Virus record (IMG/VR): IMGVR_UViG_3300020473_000013
Coordinates: 124,001 to 188,000 of that record
Reading direction: 5' to 3' (one strand)
DNA: 64,000 nucleotides
Shown: piece after piece, positions 1,538-57,768 of the stretch
How positions within the stretch are numbered: position 1 is the first letter of the stretch
How the letters are laid out: each line of letters opens with the position of its first letter
Notes under the pieces: generated by a model
Seen by the model: the letters and a program-made list of their open reading frames with translations, nothing else
Told to the model about the DNA's origin: nothing
Database searches by the model: none
Translations under genes and position numbers: made by a program

Positions 1538-2158
1538 ATGGATCGTAATCAAGCAATAGCAGGTAACATGATCGCGCTGGCGCGCCGCAAGAAAAAGAAG
1601 GGAAGCTCCCGCTCCCAGATGCTGCGCATGGTAATGCCGATGCTGAGCAGGGAACACGGAGAGAAGCTGGCGGCGGCTATCAAGGACAAGAACGTCACAA
1701 AGCTGCGCCATGTGTGGGACCAGATCAAGAATGATCTGTCTGACAAGCTGGCTGCCGAAGCGAGCGCTATCAACAAGGAAGCCTCGTTCGAGGAAGCGAT
1801 AACTAAAATCTTCGACGACTTGTTCGCGGACCTTGAGACCGCTCAGGCCTCCAACCGTGACCTGTCCAGCCTGTTCGTGGGAAGCTCCGTGATTCCCCGT
1901 CGTAGTCGGGAGCTGGTGGCCAACGGCCGGATCGAGCTTACAGACTACAAAGGCGACACGTTGAATGTTCGCCTGGCCTCGATCAAGGTGAAACAATCCG
2001 GCTCGCCGGACACCAACCCGCAGGTGGACGTGGAAGCTGCGGTGTATCGCAACAAGAGCCGCAACCGCGAGAACACACTCAAGGCCAGCGGTGAACTCGG
2101 GGCGGCGTGCTCCGAAATCGCCATCAGCGCTCTATCGCTCATCGAGAGCGAAGGGTAA
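1538..2158 (+). CDS. hypothetical protein
   Basis: 206 aa ORF with GAGGG RBS upstream. Confidence 0.7.
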   Translation: MDRNQAIAGNMIALARRKKKKGSSRSQMLRMVMPMLSREHGEKLAAAIKDKNVTKLRHVWDQIKNDLSDKLAAEASAINKEASFEEAITKIFDDLFADLETAQASNRDLSSLFVGSSVIPRRSRELVANGRIELTDYKGDTLNVRLASIKVKQSGSPDTNPQVDVEAAVYRNKSRNRENTLKASGELGAACSEIAISALSLIESEG

Positions 2159-2175: not shown

Positions 2176-2601
2176 TCACGGCTGCTCGCCTTTCACGAAC
2201 ATCTGGTCCTCCGATAGTCCTAGCGTACCCCTGCCCCTTTTCACGGCGTTCGATGCAGTAAAGCCGCTGCCGAACGTCGCCCGCACGTATTCCTTCATAG
2301 ACTCCAGCATCGCCTCTTCCCCGCTGTCCTCTACCACACACGCAGCAACCTCGATCCTATCGTGGAACCGCATACGGCTATGTTCGTCCATCGTCCGAAA
2401 GACCTGAAGCATCCTAGCAATATCGAAGGTAGAAGACGGATCGACGAACAGTAACACCACGTCGTCTGTGTTCCGAGACAGCACCTCCAGTATGTCGTCG
2501 AACGTCTTTGGATTGAAGTCCGCAAAGACACATCCGCGTTCCGACTCCGCAACATAACTCCACTTTTCCTTAGGCATGTTCATGTTCTCCGCTTGGCTCA
2601 T
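2176..2601 (-). CDS. hypothetical protein (only clear minus-strand gene in the window)
   Basis: 141 aa ORF filling the gap, convergent with 1538..2158; no competing + strand gene. Confidence 0.6.
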   Translation of the reverse strand: MSQAENMNMPKEKWSYVAESERGCVFADFNPKTFDDILEVLSRNTDDVVLLFVDPSSTFDIARMLQVFRTMDEHSRMRFHDRIEVAACVVEDSGEEAMLESMKEYVRATFGSGFTASNAVKRGRGTLGLSEDQMFVKGEQP

Positions 2602-3430
2602 CGTTTCTCACTTTTTCGAGTGTCGCAAAGCGTCAAAAATCCGGTCTGTTACACTCTGTTACAAAAAAGATTAGGTGGTTACATAGGCCTTTGTGTTGGC
2701 CTGCACGGTAGGCTTGACGTGTCGTACCGTCCTTTCTGAAAATTAGCAGTTGTGAGGTTGGTCCCGTTTTGCTTCTAGGTGCTTTCGGCTCAAAACCAAA
2801 AAGTGTCAATGCGTATACGCTAGTAGCGTTGGCGAAGTGCTGCAAGCAGCGAGAGCGCCGCAGCTAACGCGAGCCGCCGCAGGTCGGCGAGAATTAGCGA
2901 GAACGCCGAAGCGTAGCCTGCAAAAGCTGAGCAGGCGCAAGCCGGATCGAGAGTCCGTAGATCGGCTCGCCCGCGAGCGTCGTCCCAGACGTAAGCGAGC
3001 CTCCAGAGCGAAGCGCCAGCGAGCGATCCTCCGTGCGAAGCCGTAGCGTAAGGCACCGTCAGGTGCCGTATGCGACGACATTTTCGCGCACTCCCGCCTC
3101 CCGTTAGAAAGCGCGTTAGAAAGCGCGTTCAAGACCAGTTGTTAAACGGCACACCTCTGTCTTAGCTCGGAGTCGGAAGACATCCGACGGTTGATTACGG
3201 AGCGGAGGTCTGTTACCATGGATACATTCGGTTACACTGGGAGATCGGGAAAGGAAATGAGCGGGAAATGCTTATCGGTAACACTCGCCTACGGCTCGCG
3301 TCACCAGCGAGCTTCGCTCGCGTCTCTATCGAGAGGAGGTCGGAAAACCGCTCCGCCTACGGCTCCGCTCTCGGTCGCTTCGCTCCCTCACGGAAATGGA
3401 ACCGCGAATCCTAATTTCCACGTACTGTAA
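2602..3430. other. large structured non-coding region; candidate replication origin or genome-terminus element
   Basis: No credible ORF; GTTAC repeats, a 12-bp tandem repeat and many GNA/GNRA mini-hairpins; lies between divergent genes. Confidence 0.45.
3103..3126 (+). repeat. tandem direct repeat GTTAGAAAGCGC x2
   Basis: Exact duplication at 3103-3114 and 3115-3126. Confidence 0.9.
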
Positions 3431-3500
3431 ATCGAAACCCTGCAAGCAGGTAAATGCAAGAGCTACGTTCCGCTCGCCGAAAAGTATGCAGGAGCACACC

Positions 3501-3767
3501 ATGCCGAAAGAACGCCTCTATTCCGTCAGTTATATCAGCTTCTTCGATAACGAAATGCACACCGCCTTCGTTATCACTAGCGAAGGTGAAATGGAAGCGC
3601 TACGTTCCGGCCTCCGCCAGATCATGCAGGTCGAAGACGACAATCCCGACGGCACCGGCTTCGATCACTGCAAAACACTGGAGGAAGCGAAGGAGCTAGC
3701 CTTCAACACCGACAGTATGCTGGACGTGAAGCGTTACCGCCGTTCAGAGGCCATCCAGGCTCGTTAG
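3501..3767 (+). CDS. small hypothetical protein
   Basis: ATG at 3501 with AGGAG RBS; 88 aa. Confidence 0.7.
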   Translation: MPKERLYSVSYISFFDNEMHTAFVITSEGEMEALRSGLRQIMQVEDDNPDGTGFDHCKTLEEAKELAFNTDSMLDVKRYRRSEAIQAR

Positions 3768-3821: not shown

Positions 3822-4532
3822 ATGGCTAAGAAGGCACCTTCCGCCGAGAAGAAGGCAAAGTCTACCAAGAAGGCTGCGAAGACAGGCGGCAAGGTCAAGA
3901 AGTCCAAGCTGCCGAAGAAGCTCACGGTCAAAGCGCTCGCAGACGCCAGCGCTGAGTACAACCCGCGTGTCATCAGCGCCCGTCAGCTCAAGGGTCTCCA
4001 GACCTCATACGAGACGTTCGGTGACCTGAGTGGTATCGTGCTCAACCGTGCTACCGACACCATCGTGTCTGGTCACCAGCGCCTCAAGACACTGAAAGGC
4101 AAGAAGACTCGTGTGGTGACCGAGGACCACAAGGATAAGTACGGCACTGTCGAAGTCGGACATATCGAGGTCCTCGAGGATGGTACGCTCACCAAGATTC
4201 CTTTCCGCGTCGTAAACTGGTCCGACGACAAGGCGGAGAAGGCAGCCAACATCGCGGCGAACGCCCACGGCGGGGACTTCGACAACAACAAGCTGGGTAA
4301 GCTGTTGGAGGAGCTGGAACCTACTGAGGCCTTTGAGATCGAGCAGCTCGGTTTGGACCCGTTAACCATTCGCTCGCTCGGTGGTGGAGCCTCCGCTGCT
4401 GAGGAACCCAAGACAAGTAAGAAGGACAAGCCTGTCGAGGGCGAGCAGGATGATGACGATTCGTTCGGCGAGTACGACGAGAACTCCTTCGAGTTTGAAC
4501 ACCAGTGCCCTCGCTGCTCCTTCAAGTGGTGA
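3822..4532 (+). CDS. ParB/Srx-like domain protein with Lys-rich N-terminus and C-terminal CxxC ribbon
   Basis: YNPRVIS...FGDLSGIVLN...IVSGHQRL ParB-N signature; HQCPRCSFKW at the C-terminus. Confidence 0.8.
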   Translation: MAKKAPSAEKKAKSTKKAAKTGGKVKKSKLPKKLTVKALADASAEYNPRVISARQLKGLQTSYETFGDLSGIVLNRATDTIVSGHQRLKTLKGKKTRVVTEDHKDKYGTVEVGHIEVLEDGTLTKIPFRVVNWSDDKAEKAANIAANAHGGDFDNNKLGKLLEELEPTEAFEIEQLGLDPLTIRSLGGGASAAEEPKTSKKDKPVEGEQDDDDSFGEYDENSFEFEHQCPRCSFKW

Positions 4533-4537
4533 TCTGA

Positions 4538-5734
4538 ATGGCAAAGAAGAAGACGAAGACCAACGAGAAGTTTGTACCGAAGGACCCTACATCCAAGGTC
4601 GCCAAGATCGACGGCAGGGAAGTCGAGTACAACGGCGTGACGCTGGCTGATGATACCGGCGTCTCCCGCAATCATCTGGCTATCGCCGAGCCGTTGGAAG
4701 GCGGCAAGAGCCTCGTGCCTACGATGGCCAAGATCAATAAGAAGCGCAAGGACTTCACGTCCGTCAGCTTCTTTGCGGGTTGCGGTGGTGCATCCGTCGG
4801 CATGAAGATGGCAGGCTTCAACGTACTGCTATCTAACGAGTTCATTCCCGCGGCTCAGGACACTTATCAGCTCAATCATCCTGGCACCATCCTGAACAAG
4901 TCCGACATTCGTGAACTCGACCCTAAGGCCTTGCTCAAGGAGCTTGGCCTTAAGAAAGGCGAGCTGGATCACATGGACATGAGCCCTCCTTGCAAAGGCT
5001 TCTCCGCTGCAGGTGTTCAGGAAGACGGCTGGAACAAGGAGGTCCTTTACTCCGACGGTGTGAAACAGCGCGTGGATGACCTATTCGATCAAGGCATCCG
5101 GATGCTCAAGGGTATGAAGCCCAAGACGTTTACCGCCGAGAACGTGTCTGGTCTGGTGCGCGGCGTGTCCCGAGGTCTGTTCGCTGAGACCATAGAGGAC
5201 TTCAAGAAGGCCGGCTATCGCGTCAAGGCTGCGATGATCGAGCCCGTGAAGCTCGGCGTCCCGCAGACACGCGCCCGCCTCATCATCATTGGTGTGCGCA
5301 ATGACCTGAAGATGGACCCTGTATTTCCGAAGCCGTTGAAAGGACGGCCCGTTACCGTGCAGGACGTTCTCCCTCACATCGCATACCTCAAGACGAGCCT
5401 CAAGTCTCGCCTGACCTACGTTCCTGCTGACCGCCCTAGCCCCACGATCGTGGCATCCGATTTTGATACAGGGGAGAACGCGCGGTTCAGTTGCGGAGGC
5501 TGGGTAGAAGACGATCAAGGCCGCCGTCGTAAATACACGTTGCCCGAACTCCGCCGCGTCATGTGTTTTCCTGACGACTTCAAGTTGTCTGGGACTCCGC
5601 GCCAGCAATGGGAGCGTCTGGGCCGTTCACATGTCCCTCTCCAGGTTTACCACCTCAGCAAGGCAATCCGGGAGAACGTTCTGGAGCCCTACTATGACAG
5701 CAAGGGAGCGGATTACACCGACACGATTAAGTGA
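4538..5734 (+). CDS. DNA cytosine-C5 methyltransferase homologue, predicted carboxymethyltransferase
   Basis: Motif I FAGCGG, IV SPPC, VI ENV, VIII QTRAR, IX RRVMCFPD; motif X reads LGRSH (Asn->Arg). Confidence 0.9.
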   Translation: MAKKKTKTNEKFVPKDPTSKVAKIDGREVEYNGVTLADDTGVSRNHLAIAEPLEGGKSLVPTMAKINKKRKDFTSVSFFAGCGGASVGMKMAGFNVLLSNEFIPAAQDTYQLNHPGTILNKSDIRELDPKALLKELGLKKGELDHMDMSPPCKGFSAAGVQEDGWNKEVLYSDGVKQRVDDLFDQGIRMLKGMKPKTFTAENVSGLVRGVSRGLFAETIEDFKKAGYRVKAAMIEPVKLGVPQTRARLIIIGVRNDLKMDPVFPKPLKGRPVTVQDVLPHIAYLKTSLKSRLTYVPADRPSPTIVASDFDTGENARFSCGGWVEDDQGRRRKYTLPELRRVMCFPDDFKLSGTPRQQWERLGRSHVPLQVYHLSKAIRENVLEPYYDSKGADYTDTIK

Positions 5735-5738
5735 CCGC

Positions 5739-6011
5739 ATGACCGACCAAGACCTACACCAACTGAGGGAGCACATCCGTTCCCTTGAAAACCGCCTCCT
5801 CATAATGGGCTTGGCTCGCGAGGAGGCAGTTCAGGAATACCGGGTCCGTGTATCCTCCGAGTTGTCCATTGATCCGGACAGCCCTGGCTTAGCCTGCATG
5901 GAGCGAAGCATGTTCGTCTCCCGAGGCCAGCAGTTGGGGCTGTCCGACTCCGTATTGGAGAGCATGGCTGATGCACTGTTCCCTGCCACCGTCAGACCTG
6001 ACTGTAAATAA
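5739..6011 (+). CDS. hypothetical protein within the modification cluster
   Basis: 90 aa ORF filling the gap between the MTase and cmoA. Confidence 0.55.
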   Translation: MTDQDLHQLREHIRSLENRLLIMGLAREEAVQEYRVRVSSELSIDPDSPGLACMERSMFVSRGQQLGLSDSVLESMADALFPATVRPDCK

Positions 6012-6017
6012 AGGGCA
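6003..6017 (+). promoter_or_regulatory. putative phage promoter TGTAAA-N6-GCA
   Basis: TGTAAATAAAGGGCA directly upstream of the cmoA RBS; overlaps the upstream stop codon. Confidence 0.6.
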
Positions 6018-6036
6018 AACAACCGGAGGATTGACC

Positions 6037-6756
6037 ATGTACGAAGAAGATCGCGTTACCCCGAAGGATAACTGGGAGTTCGACGAGGACGTTGCCAAGT
6101 GCTTCGACAATATGCTGGAGCGCAGTATTCCCATGTATCAGGAAATGCGCAAGCTGTGTCATAAGCTCGGACGCAATTTCGTCCAGCCTCACAATTCCAT
6201 CATCGACCTCGGCGCTAGCCGCGGTGAAGCGCTCCGCCCTTTCATCGAGGACGACACTGCCAACAAATTCATGGCCGTGGAAATCTCCGAGCCTATGCGC
6301 ACTGTCATGCAGGACTTGTACCGGCATAATCCCAAGGTACGTATCTCCGATATGGACCTGCGCAAGCTCGACCAGAACGTGGGCACCCTCAGCTCTCATT
6401 CCATCTCTCTGGCTATGTCCATCCTGACTATCCAGTTCACTCCTATCGAGTATCGCCAGCAGATCATGCAGGCTATCTACGACATGTTGGAGCCCGGTGG
6501 AGCTTTCCTGTTTGTCGAGAAGGTGATCGGCAACACGGCGTCTCTGGACCGCATGTTTGTTCAGGAATACTACGACATGAAGAACCAGAACGGTTACAGC
6601 TACGAGGACATCCAACGCAAGCGCAGTTCCCTCGAAGGTGTTCTGGTTCCCGTGACAGCTAGCTGGAACGAGGACATGTTGAAGAACGCTGGTTTCCGTC
6701 AGGTGGACTGTTTCTACCGCAATCTCAATTTCGCTGGCTGGCTCGCAATCAAGTAA
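6037..6756 (+). CDS. cmoA: carboxy-S-adenosyl-L-methionine synthase (CmoA family)
   Basis: WEFDEDVAKCFDNMLERSIPMY, DLGASRG, LTIQF, VEKV, QRKRSSLEGV (conserved CmoA Arg), NLNFAGWLAIK all match CmoA; GGAGG RBS. Confidence 0.9.
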   Translation: MYEEDRVTPKDNWEFDEDVAKCFDNMLERSIPMYQEMRKLCHKLGRNFVQPHNSIIDLGASRGEALRPFIEDDTANKFMAVEISEPMRTVMQDLYRHNPKVRISDMDLRKLDQNVGTLSSHSISLAMSILTIQFTPIEYRQQIMQAIYDMLEPGGAFLFVEKVIGNTASLDRMFVQEYYDMKNQNGYSYEDIQRKRSSLEGVLVPVTASWNEDMLKNAGFRQVDCFYRNLNFAGWLAIK

Positions 6757-6764
6757 GGTGCATC

Positions 6765-7583
6765 ATGACTCTCCAAGTACGGGAACACATCACCAACACC
6801 GTAGCCAAGACGGGTGACCGATCCTGCTCGGTGCTGATGTCCTCTGGGATCGACAGCCACAGCGTCCTGTTCTCGTGCTTGGACGCTGGTCTGAAACCTG
6901 TAATCACCTCATTCACCTTGGATGACCGCGAGTCTCGCGACTTCCGAGCAGCGCGCCACGCTGCGGCCTACTTCGATCTGGAGTTCAGGCCCGTAGTTCT
7001 CAGCACGGACCTCACCAAGTTGAAGAAGCGCGTTCTCCAGATGGCGCGCCTTGGAGTTAAGGGTAAGACCGCCTTCGAGTGTCTCTGGCCTATGTTTACC
7101 GCGTTCTCTGCAATCAAGGAGGACGTGGTGTTTAGCGGTTACGGCGCCGACGCCTATTTCGCCTTGAGCAAGCGCGGCACCATGCACTATAAGGACGACG
7201 TGAGCAAGTACGCTCTGGAGGCTTTCGAGAAGTACAAGGAGCCCGACTCCCAGCTCAACGTCCTCAAGGCGTTCGCTGCCAAACGCGGTATCACCTACGC
7301 TCCTCCGTGGTTGAACAAGCACATCACCCGCCAGGTTCGGGAGCGTGTCTTCACCTGGGACGAGTTGAATCGGCCCAAGCAAAAGAATCCCGTCCGTGAG
7401 CAGTACGCCGAGTACCTCGCGGGCTGCATGGTGTACAATCATGTAAACTACCAGCTAGGCGACAGCGGAATCTCCGAGTTATTCACCAAACTACTGGACG
7501 ATCCTGTCTGGAACGCTGCGGGCTACAAATCAACCACGGGCATTTTTAACTCCGTGGTTCGAGGGGAGATCACTCAGGTATGA
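6765..7583 (+). CDS. asparagine-synthetase-like PP-loop ATP-dependent amide ligase lacking the glutaminase domain
   Basis: PP-loop SSGIDS and SGYGAD motif of the AsnB synthetase domain; 272 aa; no N-terminal Cys GATase. Confidence 0.8.
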   Translation: MTLQVREHITNTVAKTGDRSCSVLMSSGIDSHSVLFSCLDAGLKPVITSFTLDDRESRDFRAARHAAAYFDLEFRPVVLSTDLTKLKKRVLQMARLGVKGKTAFECLWPMFTAFSAIKEDVVFSGYGADAYFALSKRGTMHYKDDVSKYALEAFEKYKEPDSQLNVLKAFAAKRGITYAPPWLNKHITRQVRERVFTWDELNRPKQKNPVREQYAEYLAGCMVYNHVNYQLGDSGISELFTKLLDDPVWNAAGYKSTTGIFNSVVRGEITQV

Positions 7584-9861: not shown

Positions 9862-10608
9862 ATGCACGTCTTGGCGGAGATCGTCGAGAGGAATACTGAG
9901 CTTTTTAGCGGAGTGCACCAGCACAGGCCCAACGGCCTGCGGACTGTCCGCCCATTGTATCCCAATCGAATCAAGTTTATTTGTAGCCCTAATCGCTACC
10001 AGTTTTTGTATCCTGGTTTGTACTTTGAAATTCCTGAACGCCTGTCCTTGTATGAGATGGAGTTGTTAGAGTCAGCCGTGCTTAAGGTGCTACGCACTAA
10101 GGCGCACAAGGCAACAACAACTCCTCTCCAGATTCCCGAGACTTTAGGCAGAAAGTTGAGTGCGTCCACGAGTTCGTTCCTGTTCAATGGATTCGTAACG
10201 CGCAAGCACAAGACGTACCTGAAGTCGGCCAAGTGCGTCTGGATCGACCCGACGCCCGGCCTGTACTCTACTTCGATTCTGGAGCCTGAGTACGGGGAGG
10301 TGTTCTCCATCGAGGACACAGGTTCAATCCTGAGTTCCTTGATCACCATGTTGACCCTGTGTTGTGGTCCTGTACGCGACAGTCGGGGAGACGTTGCCAA
10401 GCGCAATATTTCCCTTGTCCGTGCTGCGTATCCCGAGGCGCACACTCCTGACCTGAACATCGGTAAGCTCGGAGAGTTGTCCTTGTCGTTTGGCAGCATC
10501 ACCCTGCAGGACTTCGAGAGTCCCCTGGGTGTAAATGTTGTGCAGGCGATGCTGTACTCTTTCCTGGACCTGCAGACCGATCTATCCAATTACATGAGGT
10601 GGCGTTAA
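9862..10608 (+). CDS. hypothetical protein
   Basis: ~248 aa ORF; stop overlaps the dnaX start. Confidence 0.65.
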   Translation: MHVLAEIVERNTELFSGVHQHRPNGLRTVRPLYPNRIKFICSPNRYQFLYPGLYFEIPERLSLYEMELLESAVLKVLRTKAHKATTTPLQIPETLGRKLSASTSSFLFNGFVTRKHKTYLKSAKCVWIDPTPGLYSTSILEPEYGEVFSIEDTGSILSSLITMLTLCCGPVRDSRGDVAKRNISLVRAAYPEAHTPDLNIGKLGELSLSFGSITLQDFESPLGVNVVQAMLYSFLDLQTDLSNYMRWR

Positions 10609-17871: not shown

Positions 17872-17908
17872 CGATAGGAAATTTTTTGGAGGTAACTCCT
17901 CACAATAA

Positions 17909-17914
17909 TAATTT
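17909..17914 (+). promoter_or_regulatory. putative late promoter core TAATTT
   Basis: CTCACAATAATAATTT, nearly identical to the context upstream of the tail sheath gene. Confidence 0.5.
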
Positions 17915-17987
17915 GTACATGTCACCGGAGTGCGGGGCGACCCGGGCGCAAGCCCTTCGCTCCGGCAACGTTGCTACGTGTACAAAT
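17911..17987 (+). ncRNA. structured 5' leader (multi-branched RNA) of the H1-like gene
   Basis: 12-bp outer stem, 8-bp inner stem, two GNRA tetraloop hairpins (GCGA, GCAA). Confidence 0.5.
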
Positions 17988-18005
17988 CAATTGGAGGCTT
18001 CCATC

Positions 18006-18920
18006 ATGGCCACTCGTAAGAAGACCCCTGCCAACGCAGTGAAGGACCCGATGCAGAAGAAGCGTCGGGTGAAGAAGGACACCAGCGCTGAGGCGCAGAA
18101 GAAGCGCCGCGCCGCTCGTCAGGACTACCAGAAGAACAAGTCCAAGGCGAAGCAGGAACGTGCCAAGCGCGAACGCACCATGACTCCGAAGGAGAAGCAG
18201 GCCAAGAAGGAGCGTGCATACGTCAACCGCCTGCGTCGCAAGGGCGAGTCCGATGCTCAGATCAAGGTCAAGCTGAAGGACTACCGCGCCAAGCTGAAGG
18301 GCATGCCGACTACCGCCCAGAAGCGCAAGGAGAAACTGGCAGCTACCCGTCAGCGTTTCGCTGATCGTCGCCAGAAGCTGATGGAGCGTTCCAAGACTAC
18401 CCGCGAGGCGTACAAGGCGCAGCGCGAGAAGAACGCCCAGAAGGCCACTCCGGCCGCTCGGAAAGCCGCCAACGCCAAGGCCAAGGCTGCCTACCAGAAG
18501 AAGATGGCAGCTATCAAGGATCAGCGCGCCAAGCTGACCGCGCAGCGTAAGGAAGCAATCGCCAAGCACAAGGCCGATGCTCCTGCCAAGAAGGCCCCGG
18601 CCAAGGCAGCTCCGGCTAAGGCAGCTCCGAAGGCAGCAGCCAAGAAGGCCCCGGCTAAGAAAGCCGCTGGCACCAAGGCTTCCACTGCCAAGAAGACCAC
18701 TGGTACCAAGGCAGCAGCCAAGAAGACCACCGGCACCAAGACCGCAGCCAAGAAGGCTCCGGCTAAGAAAGCCGCTGGCACCAAGGCAGCCGGTACCAAG
18801 ACCGCAGCCAAGAAGGCCCCGGCCAAGAAGGCCCCGGCCAAGAAGGCTCCGGCAAAGGGTGGCGCCGCCAAGAAGGAAGGCTCCGTCCCGCGTCGTCGCG
18901 GTCGCGCCAAGTCTGAATAA
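18006..18920 (+). CDS. histone H1-like / AlgP-like Lys-Ala-rich DNA-binding protein
   Basis: 304 aa, extremely basic; KKAPA and GTK[AT]AAKK repeats; GGAGG RBS. Confidence 0.8.
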   Translation: MATRKKTPANAVKDPMQKKRRVKKDTSAEAQKKRRAARQDYQKNKSKAKQERAKRERTMTPKEKQAKKERAYVNRLRRKGESDAQIKVKLKDYRAKLKGMPTTAQKRKEKLAATRQRFADRRQKLMERSKTTREAYKAQREKNAQKATPAARKAANAKAKAAYQKKMAAIKDQRAKLTAQRKEAIAKHKADAPAKKAPAKAAPAKAAPKAAAKKAPAKKAAGTKASTAKKTTGTKAAAKKTTGTKTAAKKAPAKKAAGTKAAGTKTAAKKAPAKKAPAKKAPAKGGAAKKEGSVPRRRGRAKSE

Positions 18921-52618: not shown

Positions 52619-53257
52619 ATGGAACTTCGACTGCAAAATCTCATCGAGGACTTCGAGCGCGTATCCAACGTCCGGAACCTCGACGAGAACAACCCGATCG
52701 TGATGCGGCTCAGTCACCCGACCAACGCCTCGGTGCATGTCATCGTGTGCGCGCTGACCGAGCCCGAAACTCTGGTGCTCCCGCTGAACGTCACGTGGTT
52801 CGTGTACGATCCGCTGCACAAGTTCTACCGCCAGGCTCTCCGCCGTAAGAGCAAGGACTCCGATCCTACAGGTGAGTTCTCCCATACGTGGGAGCGCGTC
52901 GAAACCTACGATGAAGTGTTCGTCGATCAGTATTATGACGCTGACGATACGGACAAGCTCAGCGATAACTCAGGTCCTGACGTTGCTCAGCCTTCCGTGC
53001 TTGGCATCGCGCGTCTGTCCGTTGAAGCCGAGGTAGCGTCCAATCCTGTCGTCGTTGCCGAAGGTGACCCTCGCCTGAGCGATGCACGCGAACCTCTGGC
53101 CCACACGCACCCGGAACGTCCCGCTCGACAGCTTCGCACTTCCGAAGGTGTTGTCACCATCGAAGGTTCCGCCGAGCCTGTGACTGGTGCCGTCCTCGTA
53201 GCAACGGGACCCAACACCGCTGAGTGGCGCAAGCTCCGCACTTCCGACATCCGCTGA
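52619..53257 (+). CDS. virion fibre-anchor protein, paralogue of the N-terminus of the next gene
   Basis: LPLNVTW..DP....YR.ALRR and PVVV...D.R.S..R.PL.H.HP shared with 53272..57768. Confidence 0.7.
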   Translation: MELRLQNLIEDFERVSNVRNLDENNPIVMRLSHPTNASVHVIVCALTEPETLVLPLNVTWFVYDPLHKFYRQALRRKSKDSDPTGEFSHTWERVETYDEVFVDQYYDADDTDKLSDNSGPDVAQPSVLGIARLSVEAEVASNPVVVAEGDPRLSDAREPLAHTHPERPARQLRTSEGVVTIEGSAEPVTGAVLVATGPNTAEWRKLRTSDIR

Positions 53258-53271
53258 TAAGGGAGCATCCC

Positions 53272-56200
53272 ATGAATCGACTGGAACAATTCGTCGATCG
53301 GTTGATGGCGGTTGCCGATAAGCGTAACCTCGCTTACGAAAACCCCGTCACCATTATGATCGACGTAGGCCAGGAGCAGTTTTACGTGGTGGTCAGCCAT
53401 GCTGAACCTAACCACGTGACTCTGCCTCTAAACGTCACATGGATCGTAGCCGATCCCGAAAGCCCGAACTACCGCAAGGCCCTGCGCCGTGCTTCCGCTC
53501 TACCGTTCGATGGACTGCGTAACACCTGGGCGGAGCTTCGTACCTACGAAGACTTCACCGAGGAACTCCAGTTCTGGGACCTGAGCGCCACCTTCCAGTT
53601 CGGTGAGATTCAGGTTCCCGGCGTCAAGGAGGCCACTCCTACCCGTCGCGGTCTGTTCTCTCTGAATCGCGAAGCTGGTGACCCTGACGATCCTGTCGTG
53701 GTAGGTGACAACGACGAGCGCATGTCCAATCCGCGCCAGCCGCTCCCTCACCAACATCCCCTGCTTCCGAGCACCATGCTGGCAGGCAGCACAGGCATCA
53801 ACGAGTTCTACGTCATCATCAGCGAAGGAGGTAGTCCCGCCGAAGGTCAGATTCTCTGTTTGACCGAGCCTGGGGATGAAGAAGGTGAATGGAACGGTAT
53901 CTGGCGCTACCCGACTGCGGCTGACATCGTGTATGACGGTCCGACGGTTCAAGAAATCGTTATCAACGGCCCCGCCGACGATCAAGTCGAAGAGGGTACT
54001 CCTGTTCCGTTCACGGCTACCGCCGTGTTTACCGACGGTTCAACCATCGAGTCTATCGCTGCGGAGTGGGAGATCATCGCCAATACTGGTGCAGGTACGA
54101 TCAGCACCAGCACAGGTGTCTTCACCTCAGCGGACGTGTCAGGTGATCAGGTCGTCCGTATCCGAGCCTCCTGGGTTCACGAGGAGAGCGGCGAGCAGCA
54201 TCAGGGTACCTACGACCTTACCGTGATCGACACCACGGTCGTGGCCGTGCTGGAGCGTATTGAACTCTCGGGTGTTGATTCCATCGACGAAGGTGGCAAC
54301 ACTTCCCAGTTCACCGTCACCGCGTTCTACGATGACGGCTCCAGCCGCGGTGTTACGCCCACCACCTTCACTTCGAGCAACCTGTCCGCTGGTTCCTTGA
54401 ACAGCAGTACCGGTATGTTCACGAGTGCGGTGGATGTGGTGAACAACCAGACCACAACCCTGAACGCGACCTACACCGAGAACGGCGTAACCGTGTCCGA
54501 TGCTCTCGACCTCACCGTAGTGGACACCACGGTGTACCCGGAGAGCGCGGTCATTCAGGGCCCGGTCGTTGTCGCCGAGAACACCGAGGAAACATACGTC
54601 CTCGTCGTCACGTTTACCGACCAGACCTCCAGCCAGGTCGCGGTGTCCGACTGGGCTATCGACAATGCTAGCGCAGGTGTTATCGGGTCTTCCGACGGCG
54701 TACTTCAGGCCCCGACCAACCTCGACGCGGACGAGATCGCTACGATCAGCGCTAGCTTCACGTCCAATGGGCGTACCGTGAACGCCAGTTACGAAATCAC
54801 CGTGACTGACGAGACCGTGTACCCTGTCAATGCTACCGTCGTTGGTCCGAACCAGATCGACGAAGGTGAAGTGGTTACCTACCAACTCGAAGTCGAGTTC
54901 AGCGACGGTACCACCAGCTTCGTCTCCGTGTCCGACTGGTCTCATGATACTGCGTCCGCAGGTAGCATCGGTCCTTCCAGTGGTGAGTTCACCGCCTCGG
55001 AGGTTACCGCGAACACCGACACTGTCATCAGTGCTAGCTACACTCAGTCTGGTGACACCGTGTCGGACACTCTGACGCTGACCGTGCTCGATACCACGAA
55101 CTACCCGGTGTCTGCTCGCATTGTCGGCAACGCTACCATGGGCGAAGGCTCCACTCAGGACCTGGACCTCGAGGTCACCTACCAGGACAACACAACAGCT
55201 ATGGTTGTCGCCGATTCCTGGGTGAGCTCCGACGACACGCTACTCCCTGTATCAGCCATCGGTGAGGTCGTGGCTAAGGATGGTCTTCGCACTGACAGCT
55301 TTGCTACCATCACCGCCAACTACTCCGAGAACGGCGTCGACCTCGCACCGACTCTCACGATCACTGTGACTGACGATACCCTGTACCCGACAGGTGCTCA
55401 GATTCTCGGTCCTATCGTGGTCAACGAAGGTACCACTGTCGGTTACTCTCTCGAAGTCACCTACGAGGGTGGTGGGAAGCAGGTGGAGCCGGTCAATACC
55501 TTCGCAATCGACAACGCCTCAGCCGGCACCATTACTAACGATGGTCGTCTGTCTGCGCCTGCCGATGTGACCTCCGATGTTGCGACGCAAGTTAGCGCCA
55601 GCTTCACTCTCGACGGCACCACCGTCAGCGCTACTCTCGACATCACCGTGACGGACGACACCGTCTATCCTGCCAGCGCTCAGATTCTGGGTCCTGTTAG
55701 CATCGACGAGGAGACCGTTCACACCTACGAGCTGGAGGTTACCTACACAGATGCTACGAAGGGTGTCGTGACCGTAAGCGACTGGGACAGCAGCAACACC
55801 GCTGCCGCCACCATCGATACGTCCACGGGTCAGCTCACCGCGCTCAGCCTTGCGGAAGACGCGATGACCACCATCAGCGCCAGCTTCACTGAGAACGGCA
55901 CGACCGTTGGAGACACCATGGACATCACTGTCCGTGACGTTACCAACTACCCCGTCAGCGCCCAGATTCTCGGCGTTGCATCCGTTCCAGAGAACGGTAC
56001 CGCCACCTATGAACTGGAAGTTACGTTCAAGGACAGCACCGTTCAGAAGATGCCTGTTACCAACTGGGCTTCTTCCAACACCAACGCTGGTGTCATCAAC
56101 GCAACCACGGGCGCGTTCCAAGCGCGTGCTAACGTGACCGCTGACGTGAACACCACCATCAGCGCCAGCTACACTGCCTTTGGGCAGACTGTTAGCGACA

Positions 56201-57768
56201 CGCATCTGGTGACCGTGACCGACGAAACTGCGTACCCAGTGTCCGCAACCCTCAACGGTCCTGTCACTGTGGACGAGAACACCGACGCCCAGTACACTCT
56301 GCGCGTAGTGTTCGACGACAGCTCCGAGCGTGACGTGCCTGCCACTGACTGGGCTGTGGACAACCCTGCCGCAGGCTCCATCGTGGCAGACACTGGTGTG
56401 TTCAGTGCTGCCGAGAACGGTACTGGTGCCAACATCACTACCGTCGTGTCCGCTTCGTGGAATGTGGATGGCGTTGAAGTGTCCGACCAGAAGACTATCG
56501 GCGTTGTCGATACGACCGTGTACCTCGAATCCGCTGAGGTGCAGGGTGCTGGCTCTGTGGACGAGGGTGCTTCCGAGACGTACCAGCTTCGCGTCTTCTA
56601 CACCGATGGTTCCGACCGCGTGGTATCCGTCGAAGACTGGGGCATCGACAGCGGCGGCGCGTTCGCTACTATCGACCCGGTCACCGGCGTGCTCACCGCG
56701 GACGCCAACTTCATCGGCGACAAGACTGTGACCATCAGTGCGTCGTTCACCGAAGGCGGTATTACCGTCGGCGACAACCTGCTGATCAACCTGGCTGACG
56801 TGATCCTGCGTCCCATCAGCCTCGACATCAGCGGTCAGAACGAAATCGACGAGGGACAGTCCGACACCTACAGCGCAGTGGTGACTTACGATAACGGTTC
56901 CACCGCGTCTGTCTCCCTGACTGATTGGGCTACGGATAACGCTGCCGCTTCCATCGACGCCACAACTGGGGAGCTGACTGCGAATCAGGTGGACGCAGAT
57001 ACCGACGTGATCATCACCGGTTCCTACACGGAGAACGGTGCAACCGCGAACGGTTCGTTCACCATGCGCGTCATCGACGTGTACGCTGTCTCCGCCGCTA
57101 TCACTGGTCCGACGTCCGTACTGGAAGGCACCACCGCTCAGTACGAAATGAACGTGACTTTCAGCGACAGTTCCGTGGATACTCGCGCTATCAGCGACTG
57201 GGCTACCTCGGATGAGGCTGTGGCGACCATCGACGCTTCCACCGGCGAACTGACCGCCGTGATGCTCGATGCTGATACTCCTGTCACGATCAGTGGTTCG
57301 TATACCGAGAACGGCTACACGGTTAATGCGACGCTTGACATCACCGTGACCGACACTCCGCCTGTGACGCAGGCTCTGCCGAAGTGGGGCTACGCTCCGT
57401 ATGCTGGTCCTGATCTGACGGCCGCAGGCGACACCGTTCAGTCGTTCCTAGACGCTTTGCCTAGCGACATGCCGAGCGAGAGCAACGGCGAGGAGTTCAC
57501 CTACGACCTTCCGGATGGGAACACTTATGCGTACTTCGCGCATCCGAAGTCGCTGGGTCTCGCCACGTTCACCGACACGGCTAACAACTTCGCCGGTTCG
57601 TGGGACGGTGCTTCGTGGCAGAGCGATCTGTCCAACATGGACAACACCGGTCCGATCGAGGTGACCTACGACGATGGTTCTGGTCCGGCCCAGTGGTACG
57701 TATATCGTACTGATTGGCCTGGACCCAGCAACAATCCGTCCACCTTCCGGGTCGATTACGCGGGCTAA
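53272..57768 (+). CDS. large Ig-like (Big_2-type) repeat virion fibre protein
   Basis: 1498 aa; 12 tandem ~95-aa repeats starting YPxSAxIxGPxxVxE; T/V/D/S-rich. Confidence 0.85.
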   Translation: MNRLEQFVDRLMAVADKRNLAYENPVTIMIDVGQEQFYVVVSHAEPNHVTLPLNVTWIVADPESPNYRKALRRASALPFDGLRNTWAELRTYEDFTEELQFWDLSATFQFGEIQVPGVKEATPTRRGLFSLNREAGDPDDPVVVGDNDERMSNPRQPLPHQHPLLPSTMLAGSTGINEFYVIISEGGSPAEGQILCLTEPGDEEGEWNGIWRYPTAADIVYDGPTVQEIVINGPADDQVEEGTPVPFTATAVFTDGSTIESIAAEWEIIANTGAGTISTSTGVFTSADVSGDQVVRIRASWVHEESGEQHQGTYDLTVIDTTVVAVLERIELSGVDSIDEGGNTSQFTVTAFYDDGSSRGVTPTTFTSSNLSAGSLNSSTGMFTSAVDVVNNQTTTLNATYTENGVTVSDALDLTVVDTTVYPESAVIQGPVVVAENTEETYVLVVTFTDQTSSQVAVSDWAIDNASAGVIGSSDGVLQAPTNLDADEIATISASFTSNGRTVNASYEITVTDETVYPVNATVVGPNQIDEGEVVTYQLEVEFSDGTTSFVSVSDWSHDTASAGSIGPSSGEFTASEVTANTDTVISASYTQSGDTVSDTLTLTVLDTTNYPVSARIVGNATMGEGSTQDLDLEVTYQDNTTAMVVADSWVSSDDTLLPVSAIGEVVAKDGLRTDSFATITANYSENGVDLAPTLTITVTDDTLYPTGAQILGPIVVNEGTTVGYSLEVTYEGGGKQVEPVNTFAIDNASAGTITNDGRLSAPADVTSDVATQVSASFTLDGTTVSATLDITVTDDTVYPASAQILGPVSIDEETVHTYELEVTYTDATKGVVTVSDWDSSNTAAATIDTSTGQLTALSLAEDAMTTISASFTENGTTVGDTMDITVRDVTNYPVSAQILGVASVPENGTATYELEVTFKDSTVQKMPVTNWASSNTNAGVINATTGAFQARANVTADVNTTISASYTAFGQTVSDTHLVTVTDETAYPVSATLNGPVTVDENTDAQYTLRVVFDDSSERDVPATDWAVDNPAAGSIVADTGVFSAAENGTGANITTVVSASWNVDGVEVSDQKTIGVVDTTVYLESAEVQGAGSVDEGASETYQLRVFYTDGSDRVVSVEDWGIDSGGAFATIDPVTGVLTADANFIGDKTVTISASFTEGGITVGDNLLINLADVILRPISLDISGQNEIDEGQSDTYSAVVTYDNGSTASVSLTDWATDNAAASIDATTGELTANQVDADTDVIITGSYTENGATANGSFTMRVIDVYAVSAAITGPTSVLEGTTAQYEMNVTFSDSSVDTRAISDWATSDEAVATIDASTGELTAVMLDADTPVTISGSYTENGYTVNATLDITVTDTPPVTQALPKWGYAPYAGPDLTAAGDTVQSFLDALPSDMPSESNGEEFTYDLPDGNTYAYFAHPKSLGLATFTDTANNFAGSWDGASWQSDLSNMDNTGPIEVTYDDGSGPAQWYVYRTDWPGPSNNPSTFRVDYAG

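What the first reader, a model, noticed from the sequence alone, without database searches (positions are those of the whole stretch)
2602..3430. 830-bp non-coding region with strand-polarised GNA mini-hairpins and iteron-like repeats: candidate bidirectional origin or terminus
Seen: the largest non-coding gap and the only divergent gene junction in the window. On the left, GNA-loop mini-hairpins read on the + strand (GCGTAGC 2911; GCGAAGC 3008, 3035; GGCACC-GTCA-GGTGCC 3052). On the right they read on the - strand (GCCTACGGC 3287, 3355; GCTTCGC 3311, 3377), so polarity flips around 3070-3280. GTTAC repeats occur at 2645, 2655, 2677, 3209, 3229 and inverted at 3278, with a 12-bp tandem repeat at 3103. 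Established: d(GCGAAGC)-type hairpins are exceptionally stable in ssDNA and occur in ssDNA-phage origins and N4 hairpin promoters. Inference: ssDNA priming or loading signals for two divergent forks, or a packaging/terminus element.
Basis: partly seen in the sequence, partly recalled or inferred. Interest (0 to 1): 0.62.

Follow-up and report, generated by a model that had tools for sequence, protein, structure and literature searches.

The report
Conserved hairpin-rich non-coding unit, jumbo phage
The 0.9-kb gap holds a deeply conserved, hairpin-studded non-coding element of a marine PaBG/Lu11-like jumbo phage that is transcribed and matches no known RNA family; it is more likely a structured RNA or leader than a proven replication origin, but an origin role is not excluded.

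Summary
The sequence features are real, and the gap is non-coding (2602-3500). The window lies in a 224,853-bp marine jumbo phage related to Pseudomonas phages PaBG, Lu11 and HRDY3.

Every relative examined has a homologous 0.45-1.5 kb non-coding element after the same conserved 206-aa gene. This holds down to 30% protein identity in the flanking gene.

- **Hairpins.** Perfect hairpins with C-GNA-G triloops are 25-55 times denser inside the element than outside. Their stems show compensatory changes (18 pairs against 9.8 expected, 0/500 shuffles).
- **Polarity flip.** It is conserved in the window's clade (Fisher P=0.003) but absent from the Lu11/HRDY3 clade.
These mostly fail. The skew turning point lies 6 kb to the left, at the true strand switch. 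The divergent junction and the 12-bp repeat are not conserved.
- **RNA evidence.** RNA-library contigs from two samples cover 2975-3331. Both end 10 nt after a conserved GC-rich UUC-loop hairpin with a pyrimidine-rich tail.
- **Promoter.** The sister clade has the phage's own promoter motif directly upstream in 9 of 9 genomes.

Best reading: a new structured non-coding transcription unit (about 0.5). Main rival: a transcription-fed origin signalled by single-stranded-DNA hairpins (about 0.3).

The parts
1538..2158 (+). Conserved 206-aa gene (phrog_31583-like N-terminal domain) that precedes the element in nearly all relatives
   Evidence: tblastn hits in 28 loci, always just upstream of the non-coding element; PHROG hits. 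The fold model has low confidence, pLDDT 59.5.
2176..2601 (-). 141-aa gene of unknown function. It creates the 'divergent junction' and is not part of the conserved element.
   Evidence: No Pfam or PHROG family. A homologue exists only in L020/L021, at 28% identity.
2633..2690 (.). Lowest-GC stretch (32-35% GC), with GTTACA direct repeats 10 bp apart (2648, 2658), a third copy at 2678 and an A6 run
   Evidence: The block TGTTACA-N4-GTTACAAAAAAG is conserved in L005. On the minus strand it reads TGTAAC, 45-65 nt upstream of the 141-aa gene.
2789..2810 (+). 22-nt block ending in TGTCAAT. It sits at the position of the CTGTAAA promoter of the sister clade.
   Evidence: Identical in L005. TGTCAA is invariant in 7 clade-A sequences. 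It scores only 0.3 bits on the phage's own promoter matrix.
2807..2831 (+). First hairpin, CAATGC...GCGTTG
   Evidence: CAATAC/GTATTG in L005, L021 and L002, with one compensatory and one wobble change.
2830..3070 (+). Purine-rich (58%) arm rich in AGCGA/AAGCG/GCGAAGC, with mini-hairpins at 2911, 3008 and 3035 and perfect hairpins at 2875, 2965 and 3052-3067
   Evidence: AGCGA, AAGCG and GCGAA are the k-mers enriched in 5-8 of 11 homologous elements. GCGAAGCG repeats are kept even in L036, a 38%-GC relative at 30% identity.
3102..3129 (.). 12-bp tandem repeat CGTTAGAAAGCG, 2.3 copies
   Evidence: Not conserved in L005.
3155..3188 (+). Conserved block CTCTGTCTT, then hairpin GTCGGA-AGACA-TCCGAC
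   Evidence: A related (A)GNTCTGT block occurs in the sister clade.
3207..3283 (.). GTTAC copies (3212, 3231) and an inverted copy (3278)
   Evidence: Not conserved in L005.
3286..3365 (+). Pyrimidine-rich arm with the direct repeat CGCCTACGGCTC (3286-3297 and 3354-3365)
3307..3331 (+). GC-rich hairpin GCGAGC-TTC-GCTCGC plus a GTCTCTATCG tail: a terminator-like 3' end
   Evidence: RNA-library contigs of X5 and X7 both end at 3331. A homologous TNC-loop hairpin with a pyrimidine-rich tail occurs in L005, L002, PaBG, L015 and L036.
3365..3391 (+). Conserved block CCGCTCTCGGTCGCTTCGCTCCCTCAC
   Evidence: A TTCGCTC(N)GCTCAC-type block occurs in L005, L021, L002, PaBG and L036.
3392..3419 (+). Hairpin GGAAAT...ATTTCC holding the conserved CCTAATTT
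3425..3432 (+). CTGTAAAT, a sub-threshold copy of the phage promoter motif, ahead of the 88-aa gene
3467..3473 (+). GTTCCGC, kept near the 3' end of the element in both clades
   Evidence: invariant GTTCC in 9/9 of clade B; also seen in L021 and L002.
3501..3767 (+). 88-aa gene (right flank), followed by a ParB-like gene (3822-4532) and a C5 DNA methylase gene (4538-5734)
   Evidence: These downstream genes are not syntenic in relatives.

Best explanation
The gap holds a lineage-wide non-coding transcription unit of PaBG/Lu11-like jumbo phages. In the window it spans about 2789-3331, with a conserved tail to about 3480.

Its order is:
1. a promoter-position motif;
2. a 5' hairpin;
3. a purine-rich stretch of AGCGA/GCGAAGC repeats, with short perfect hairpins capped by C-G(N)NA-G loops;
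4. a variable centre;
5. a GC-rich hairpin with a UUC loop and a pyrimidine-rich tail, where transcripts end.

I think it acts mainly as RNA. It would be either a structured non-coding RNA built as a string of hairpins, or a long leader with a leaky terminator feeding the downstream plus-strand genes. On this reading, the strand 'flip' comes from the terminator-like hairpin and the CGCT-rich 3' tail.

Shown: conservation, covarying hairpins, the loop class, presence in RNA libraries with a shared end, and no match to a known RNA family.

Inferred: the strand of the RNA, its 5' end, and that the RNA rather than the DNA is the active form.
For: - **Synteny and depth.** A homologous non-coding element follows the same 206-aa gene in about 20 distinct relatives, down to 30% identity of the flanking protein.
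- **Not coding.** Indels against L005 are not multiples of three, and no open reading frame is conserved.
- **Covariation.** 92% of cells are paired. Eighteen pairs show a change on both sides, against 9.8 +/- 1.8 in shuffles (0/500) and 2-8 in slid controls.
- **Own transcription unit.** In 9 of 9 Lu11/HRDY3-clade genomes the upstream operon ends in an intrinsic terminator. The phage's own promoter motif, AAAAACTGTAAA, then points into the element. L036, L029 and L026 have the same arrangement. The motif occurs 32 times in the window's genome, on the strand of the genes it precedes.
- **RNA.** Metatranscriptome contigs from two samples cover 2975-3331, at depth 4-14. Neighbouring genes are at 5-13 in X5 and 56-216 in X7. 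Both contigs end at 3331, 10 nt after the hairpin at 3307-3321.
- **Conserved 3' hairpin.** That hairpin and its pyrimidine-rich tail are conserved while the stem sequence changes.
- **Loops.** Lu11 has GAAA and L013 has GCAA at one hairpin, both typical RNA tetraloops.
Against: - Stems are almost purely Watson-Crick and show no strand-specific wobble. In helices predicted on both strands there are 16 G-U cells against 11 A-C cells. Hairpins with a wobble number 46 on the plus strand and 62 on the minus strand. An RNA should favour G-U.
- The loop set (GAA, GTA, GGA, GCA, GAAA, GCAA, GTTA) fits the DNA mini-hairpin rule at least as well as any RNA rule (PMC13037366).
- The architecture is short local hairpins. 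No long-range helices are supported by covariation.
- In the window's clade the promoter-position motif is TGTCAAT, which is not a general promoter in this genome (0.3 bits). It also overlaps the first hairpin.
- No RNA contigs cover 2812-2975. Contigs cannot give the strand, and DNA carry-over cannot be fully excluded.
- The tail after the hairpin is weak compared with this phage's clear T-run terminators.
Confidence: 0.5

Rival explanations
1. A replication-initiation or priming zone fed by transcription. A promoter drives a purine-rich transcript into the element, which could form an R-loop as at T4 oriF/oriG or ColE1. The displaced non-template strand would fold into very stable C-GNA-G mini-hairpins that resist single-strand-binding protein. 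These would serve as primase or helicase-loading signals, like the G4 complementary-strand origin or RSF1010 ssiA/ssiB. In the window's clade, the second arm carries the same signals on the other strand for the opposite fork.
For: - The loop class is exactly that of the G4/St-1 origins and RSF1010 ssiA (CCGAAGG), as reviewed in PMC13037366. GGGAACC-GAA-GGTTCCC in relatives contains that same heptamer.
- Stems are Watson-Crick only, with no strand bias in wobble pairs.
- The polarity flip is conserved in clade A.
- The 5' half is purine-rich in all homologues.
- The element lies in the replication module. The primase gene is 6 kb upstream. SbcC-like, helicase, polymerase and ligase genes lie downstream.
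- A 32%-GC stretch with GTTACA repeats 10 bp apart is conserved in L005.
- The TGTAAATA motif also precedes the DNA polymerase gene, so it is not a late-only promoter.
Against: - There is no skew inflection at the site. The turning point is 6 kb away, at the strand switch.
- The Lu11/HRDY3 clade has 18 plus-strand and only 2 minus-strand GNA hairpins, so no symmetric design.
- The 12-bp repeat and most GTTAC copies are not conserved.
- The left-arm mini-hairpins of the window are barely above chance (P=0.095).
- The minus-strand GNA hairpin doubles as a terminator-like RNA end.
- No initiator gene has been identified.
Confidence: 0.3
2. A DNA site for proteins of another process. One option is a packaging-initiation (pac) region read by the conserved 206-aa protein encoded just upstream. 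Others are a topoisomerase site or a ParB-type site.
For: - The element is strictly linked to the upstream 206-aa gene. The low-confidence model of that protein has an N-terminal helical, basic domain, long helices and a C-terminal beta part.
- Contigs of four relatives end in or just after the element's 3' C-rich tail: L007/L023, the 312-kb L017, L026 and L028.
- A ParB-like gene lies downstream in the window and in L020/L021.
Against: - Stems change sequence while keeping pairing, which does not fit sequence-specific duplex binding.
- ParB is not syntenic in most relatives.
- Contig ends are as well explained by poor coverage of an 80%-GC, G-quadruplex-prone tract.
- No large terminase was found with two Pfam models, so nothing links this region to a packaging module.
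Confidence: 0.1
3. N4-type hairpin promoters: hairpins on the template strand, read by a phage single-subunit RNA polymerase, driving divergent transcription outwards.
For: Hairpins of 5-7 bp with GGA or GAA loops match the N4 early-promoter form (PMC13037366).
Against: - The group uses host RNA polymerase with a phage sigma factor (PMC7412058).
- No T7/N4-like polymerase was found in the genome. The control genomes also gave no signal, so this is inconclusive.
- RNA contigs lie between the arms, not outside them.
- In the sister clade a conventional promoter points the other way.
Confidence: 0.03

Closest known systems
Single-strand initiation signals: G4/St-1/alpha3 complementary-strand origins and RSF1010 ssiA/ssiB
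   Same: Stable hairpins capped by C-G(N)NA-G mini-hairpin loops. In the window's clade they sit on opposite strands in two arms, and a DnaG-type primase is encoded nearby.
   Different: This is a 225-kb double-stranded-DNA phage. It carries an array of many hairpins over 0.5 kb, not one or two signals. The sister clade has no opposite-strand arm. No priming or initiation has been shown, and there is no skew signal.
T4 oriF(uvsY)/oriG(34) and ColE1: promoter-driven R-loop origins
   Same: A phage promoter points into a non-coding stretch whose transcript would be purine-rich. The same promoter would also serve the downstream gene, as at T4 uvsY.
   Different: No R-loop or RNA-DNA junction has been shown. 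The element is much longer and hairpin-rich. In the window's clade the promoter motif is a non-canonical variant.
Hairpin-array regulatory RNAs (CsrB/RsmZ-type sponges) and long structured phage RNAs (GOLLD, ROOL)
   Same: A discrete unit with a promoter, many short hairpins sharing one loop class, and a terminator-like end. It is phage-borne, with tRNA genes nearby in PaBG, L002 and L015.
   Different: The loops are GNA with any middle base, not GGA. No Rfam family matches. There is no multi-branch core supported by covariation, and no binding partner is known.
Bacteriophage N4 early hairpin promoters
   Same: The form is the same: a 5-7 bp stem with a 3-nt GGA or GAA loop.
   Different: No N4-like virion RNA polymerase was found, and the transcript positions do not fit.

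Membership tests
ssi / G4-type primase-dependent single-strand origin | Stable hairpin with a C-G(N)NA-G mini-hairpin on the strand to be primed | tested here: met
   3.3-6.1 such hairpins per kb inside the element against 0.11-0.13 outside. The loops seen are GAA, GTA, GGA, GCA, GAAA, GCAA and GTTA.
ssi / G4-type primase-dependent single-strand origin | Paired signals on opposite strands (ssiA/ssiB arrangement) | tested here: inconclusive
   Met in the window's clade (5/1 against 0/8, P=0.003). Not met in the Lu11/HRDY3 clade, with 18 plus-strand and 2 minus-strand hairpins.
ssi / G4-type primase-dependent single-strand origin | A cognate primase primes at the hairpin | not testable with these tools
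   Only the presence of a DnaG-type zinc-ribbon primase gene, 6 kb upstream, is shown.
Bidirectional replication origin or terminus | Strand-composition inflection at the site | tested here: not met
   The cumulative AT-skew minimum and a local GC-skew minimum lie at genome position ~120.0-120.6 kb. The element is at 126.6-127.5 kb. The global GC-skew extremes are at 1 and 204 kb.
Bidirectional replication origin or terminus | Conserved iterons next to an AT-rich unwinding element | tested here: inconclusive
   A GTTACA pair 10 bp apart, in a 32%-GC stretch, is conserved in L005. The 12-bp tandem repeat and the other GTTAC copies are not conserved.
Promoter-driven R-loop origin (T4 oriF/G type) | A phage promoter directly upstream, pointing into the element | tested here: inconclusive
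   A canonical CTGTAAA is present in 9/9 clade-B genomes and in L036, L029 and L026. The window has TGTCAAT, which scores 0.3 bits on the phage's matrix.
Any described RNA family (Rfam 15) | Covariance-model match | tested here: not met
   No hit at gathering score in the window. The only hit at E<10 in 2500-3600 is a chance-level CRISPR-repeat match. Nine relatives' loci give only tRNAs. ARAGORN finds no tRNA in the window.
Structured non-coding RNA (generic) | Base pairs kept through compensatory change | tested here: met
   18 pairs with changes on both sides against 9.8 +/- 1.8 expected (0/500 shuffles); slid controls give 2-8.
Structured non-coding RNA (generic) | Strand-specific G-U tolerance | tested here: not met
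   16 G-U against 11 A-C cells in helices shared by both strands. Hairpins with a wobble: 46 on the plus strand and 62 on the minus strand.
Structured non-coding RNA (generic) | Present as a discrete RNA | tested here: inconclusive
   RNA-library contigs cover 2975-3331 in two samples and share the end at 3331. Contigs do not show strand or 5' end, and nothing covers 2812-2975.
Intrinsic terminator | GC-rich hairpin followed by a U-run, with an RNA 3' end 7-10 nt after the stem | tested here: inconclusive
   The hairpin at 3307-3321 and the contig ends at 3331 fit. The tail, GUCUCUAUCG, is only pyrimidine-rich. The pattern scanner did not call it.
N4 hairpin promoter | An N4-like single-subunit virion RNA polymerase in the genome | tested here: inconclusive
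   PF00940 found nothing in the genome, but the control genomes were also silent.
CsrB/RsmZ-type sponge RNA | GGA in most hairpin loops | tested here: not met
   The loops are GNA with any middle base. GGA is a minority.
Protein-coding gene | An open frame kept in relatives, with indels in multiples of three | tested here: not met
   Indels of 1, 2, 4 and 7 nt against L005, and a 2-nt indel inside clade B. The ORFs at 2806-3132(-), 2837-3046(+) and 3191-3430(+) are not conserved.

The most novel reading that the evidence does not exclude
The element is the replication origin, or one of them, of PaBG/Lu11-like jumbo phages. It would be a type not described for large double-stranded-DNA phages. 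A phage promoter opens the duplex. Arrays of ultra-stable C-GNA-G DNA mini-hairpins on the displaced strand, and on both strands in the window's clade, then act as primase or helicase entry signals, as at RSF1010 ssiA/ssiB or the G4 complementary-strand origin.
Probability: 0.3. Interest if true: 0.8.

Novelty: new variant of a known kind. Interest (0 to 1): 0.55.

Why it matters
Origins and regulatory RNAs of jumbo phages outside the T4 and phiKZ groups are essentially unknown.

This element is deeply conserved: recognisable where the flanking protein is only 30% identical, and in genomes from 38% to 55% GC. It is present in cultivable phages (PaBG, Lu11, HRDY3), so its function can be tested directly.

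- If it acts as RNA, it is a new phage RNA family with an unusual uniform loop class.
- If it acts as DNA, it would carry hairpin-signalled priming, known from single-stranded-DNA phages and IncQ plasmids, into a 200-300 kb double-stranded-DNA virus.

The region is unannotated in PaBG. In Lu11 it carries two small predicted genes that are probably spurious.

Tried and rejected
- **Protein-coding reading.** The arginine-rich ORFs on both strands are not conserved, and indels break every frame.
- **tRNA, tmRNA or any Rfam family.** None found.
- **Dispersed repeat or mobile element.** There are no paralogous copies in the 225-kb genome.
- **One giant 5'-3' stem or inverted repeat as the cause of the flip.** Left-right complementarity is strong only in L005 (z=-5.6) and L002 (z=-3.2). 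It is absent from the window (z=-0.6) and from clade B.
- **Antiterminator pairing of upstream GCGAAGC with the UUC hairpin.** Not above composition (P=0.1-0.8 in 6 of 7 sequences).
- **Strand calling from wobble pairs or alifold energies.** No preference. Energies are -40.6 for the plus strand and -45.3 for the minus strand.
- **TGTCAAT as a second promoter class.** Its other copies lie in coding sequence. A sigma-70 scan was no better than shuffles.
- **Pattern scan of IMG/VR for the 5' motif.** It returned 35 loci, and only L005's own contig was real.
- **Function of the two conserved upstream proteins.** No solved-structure match. The Atlas gave only unnamed viral clusters. The fold of the 206-aa protein was too uncertain (pLDDT 59.5) to search with.
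- **Large terminase.** Not found with PF03237 or PF17289.
- **N4-like polymerase.** The search was uninformative.
- **Whole-region RNA folds.** Only z about -2.6 on either strand.

The costly whole-database protein searches were not used. No other genetic code was needed. The single read-laying run used 5,001 letters.
Full report
**Context.** The window is bases 124,001-188,000 of a single 224,853-bp virus record. Its ends overlap, CheckV rates it complete, and its GC content is 55%. The flanking proteins place it with Pseudomonas jumbo phages PaBG (46% identity), Lu11 and HRDY3. More distant relatives are the Erwinia and Dickeya jumbo phages. This is the 'Lupandier' group of PMC7412058, which uses host RNA polymerase with a phage sigma factor. 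Public runs that hold the stretch are mostly marine metagenomes. One 141-kb metagenome contig carries an identical copy of the flanking genes (L018).

**Observation.** The non-coding stretch runs from 2602 to 3500. On the left is a 141-aa minus-strand gene (2176-2601). On the right is an 88-aa gene that starts at 3501 behind AGGAG.

Judged on the window alone the evidence is mixed:
- Right arm GCTNCGC: 4 observed, 0.18 expected (P=0.001).
- Left arm GCGNAGC: 3 observed, 1.15 expected (P=0.095). These are 2-bp stems in an AGCG-rich stretch.
- GTTAC/GTAAC: 6 observed, 1.36 expected (P=0.003).

The region has no copies elsewhere in the genome.

**Conservation.** PaBG has an unannotated 1.48-kb gap at the syntenic place. 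Lu11 and HRDY3 have 0.63-0.75 kb gaps there; Lu11's carries two small predicted genes. Scans of IMG/VR and of metagenome contigs gave about 20 further distinct loci.

In all of them the element follows the homologue of the window's 206-aa gene (1538-2158). That gene was found in 28 loci. The downstream genes differ between relatives. The 141-aa divergent gene exists only in the window and in L020/L021. The 'divergent junction' is therefore incidental.

The closest relative is L005, at 68% protein identity and 43% GC. It shares these blocks with the window:
- a 22-nt block that is identical (2789-2810, ending in TGTCAAT);
- TGTTACA-N4-GTTACAAAAAAG;
- AGCGAAGCG;
- CTCTGTCTT;
- CCGCTCTCG..CTTCG..CTCAC;
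- CCTAATTT.

L036 is a relative at 30% identity and 38% GC. Even there the unit keeps a promoter motif, a plus-strand GAA hairpin, three GCGAAGCG copies, a TTC-loop hairpin with a pyrimidine-rich tail, and TTCGCTC. Indels break every reading frame, so the element is non-coding.

**Hairpins.** Perfect C-GNA-G hairpins with stems of 4 bp or more occur at 3.3 per kb (window's clade) and 6.1 per kb (Lu11/HRDY3 clade) inside the element. In the flanks the rate is 0.11-0.13 per kb.

Stems change sequence while keeping both the pairing and the loop class. One example is GGTGGC-GTA-GCCACC against GGGAACC-GAA-GGTTCCC at the same position.

On the nine-genome alignment of the sister clade:
- 92% of cells are paired;
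- 18 pairs carry changes on both sides, against 9.8 +/- 1.8 in shuffles (0/500) and 2-8 in slid controls.

Loops at the best-supported hairpins are GAA, GTA, GGA, GCA, GAAA, GCAA and GTTA. This is the C-G(N)NA-G mini-hairpin class. It has been reviewed for the G4/St-1 origins, RSF1010 ssiA and N4 promoters (PMC13037366).

The polarity flip is conserved in the window's clade. Plus-strand GNA loops split 5/1 between the 5' and 3' halves, and minus-strand GNA loops split 0/8 (P=0.003). The sister clade shows no flip, with 18 plus-strand and 2 minus-strand hairpins.

**Tests of the origin idea.** Genes run on the minus strand over 1-120 kb of the genome and on the plus strand from about 124 kb onward. 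The cumulative AT-skew minimum, and a local GC-skew minimum, lie near 120.0-120.6 kb. A back-to-back pair of promoter motifs sits at that position. This is 6 kb to the left of the element, and there is no inflection at 126.6-127.5 kb.

The skew follows gene orientation, so this is only weak evidence against an origin. The 12-bp tandem repeat and most GTTAC copies are not conserved.

In favour of an origin, the element lies inside the replication module:
- a DnaG-type primase gene at genome position ~120.7 kb;
- RuvC-like and RecB-like genes in the relatives;
- SbcC-like, a 1,998-aa helicase, DNA polymerase, a second helicase and a ligase downstream.

**Evidence for transcription.** The motif (C/G)TGTAAATA occurs 18 times on the plus strand and 14 on the minus strand, on the strand of the genes it precedes. 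One copy lies ahead of the DNA polymerase gene. Lu11's authors annotated the same motif as a promoter.

In all nine sister-clade genomes the upstream operon ends in an intrinsic terminator. AAAAACTGTAAA then points into the element, and no second copy lies before the next gene. L036, L029 and L026 show the same arrangement.

The window's clade has an invariant TGTCAA at that position. This variant is not a general promoter here, scoring 0.3 bits.

Metatranscriptome contigs from two samples cover 2975-3331. X5 has depth 4, against 5-13 for its neighbours. X7 has depth 14, against 56-216. Both contigs stop at 3331, with at most 5 unmatched letters beyond. That point is 10 nt after the hairpin GCGAGC-TTC-GCTCGC. 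Its counterparts in L005, L002, PaBG, L015 and L036 have different stems, the same loop type and a pyrimidine-rich tail.

Two limits apply to this evidence. Contigs cannot show strand or level, and nothing covers 2812-2975.

**RNA or DNA?** Sequence analysis did not settle this.
- For RNA: the unit has a promoter, a body and a terminator-like end. A shared RNA end exists. GNRA loops occur in two genomes.
- For DNA: stems are almost purely Watson-Crick, with no strand-specific wobble. The loop set follows the DNA mini-hairpin rule. The architecture is a string of short perfect hairpins, with no long-range helix supported by covariation. The polarity flips in one clade.

A transcription-fed origin would reconcile both sets of evidence, but it needs more assumptions. 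I put the RNA unit at about 0.5 and an origin or priming zone at about 0.3. Another DNA site is about 0.1, and N4-type promoters about 0.03.

**Known families.** No Rfam family matches in the window or in nine relatives' loci. The element works like known things in part: ssi signals, R-loop origins and hairpin-array RNAs. It cannot be filed under any of them, because defining features are either untestable here or not met (see the membership table).

**Verdict.** This is a real, deeply conserved and previously unannotated structured non-coding element. The origin interpretation is a live but unproven minority reading, and the terminus and packaging readings lack support.

Noticed in passing
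whole genome; window 3778, 6003, 9819, 16325, 38181, 41430, 46229, 59567: (C/G)TGTAAATA, resembling the T4 late promoter TATAAATA, occurs 18 times on the plus strand and 14 on the minus strand. It lies on the strand of the genes it precedes, often just after a T-run terminator. This is probably the phage's own promoter class. It also precedes the DNA polymerase gene.
   Followed up: partly
G000:C1:120645-120680 (3.3 kb left of the window start): A back-to-back pair of TGTAAATA motifs marks the genome's main strand switch and coincides with the cumulative AT-skew minimum. The DnaG-type primase gene starts immediately to its right (120,694).
   Followed up: partly
window 18468-18876, inside ORF 17886-18920: Long 15/30/60-nt tandem repeats encode a lysine/alanine/proline-rich (AKKAP-like) low-complexity protein. 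It matches no PHROG family.
   Followed up: no
window 3822-7583: A run of DNA or nucleotide-modification genes lies directly after the element: ParB-like, C5 cytosine methylase, a SAM methyltransferase, and an asparagine-synthase/QueC-like protein. It is not syntenic in PaBG or Lu11.
   Followed up: partly
window 53224-57768: The 1,514-aa tail protein also matches an HNH-endonuclease PHROG in its first ~120 residues.
   Followed up: no
L017:10690-10745, L028:6495-6527, L007:10330-10553, L026:4310-4613: Contigs of four relatives, one of them 312 kb, end in or just after the element's 3' tail. In the Lu11/HRDY3 clade that tail is an ~80%-GC C-rich tract whose complement has four G-runs, so it could form a G-quadruplex. 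The cause may be a coverage drop-out or real ends; this is undecided.
   Followed up: no
L003:10000-10197 and 10417-10548 (Lu11_0129A/B); L001:8823-10299 (PaBG): Lu11's two small annotated genes lie inside the conserved non-coding element and are probably not genes. PaBG leaves the same region unannotated.
   Followed up: partly
window 3611-3648: RNA-library contigs of one sample (X5, X8) carry five clustered base differences in the 88-aa gene. This points to a co-occurring strain variant.
   Followed up: no
L005:10205-10392: L005 keeps the minus-strand TGTAAC motifs and a two-way terminator, but has only about 150 nt between them and no 141-aa gene. This may be a remnant or a small RNA.
   Followed up: no
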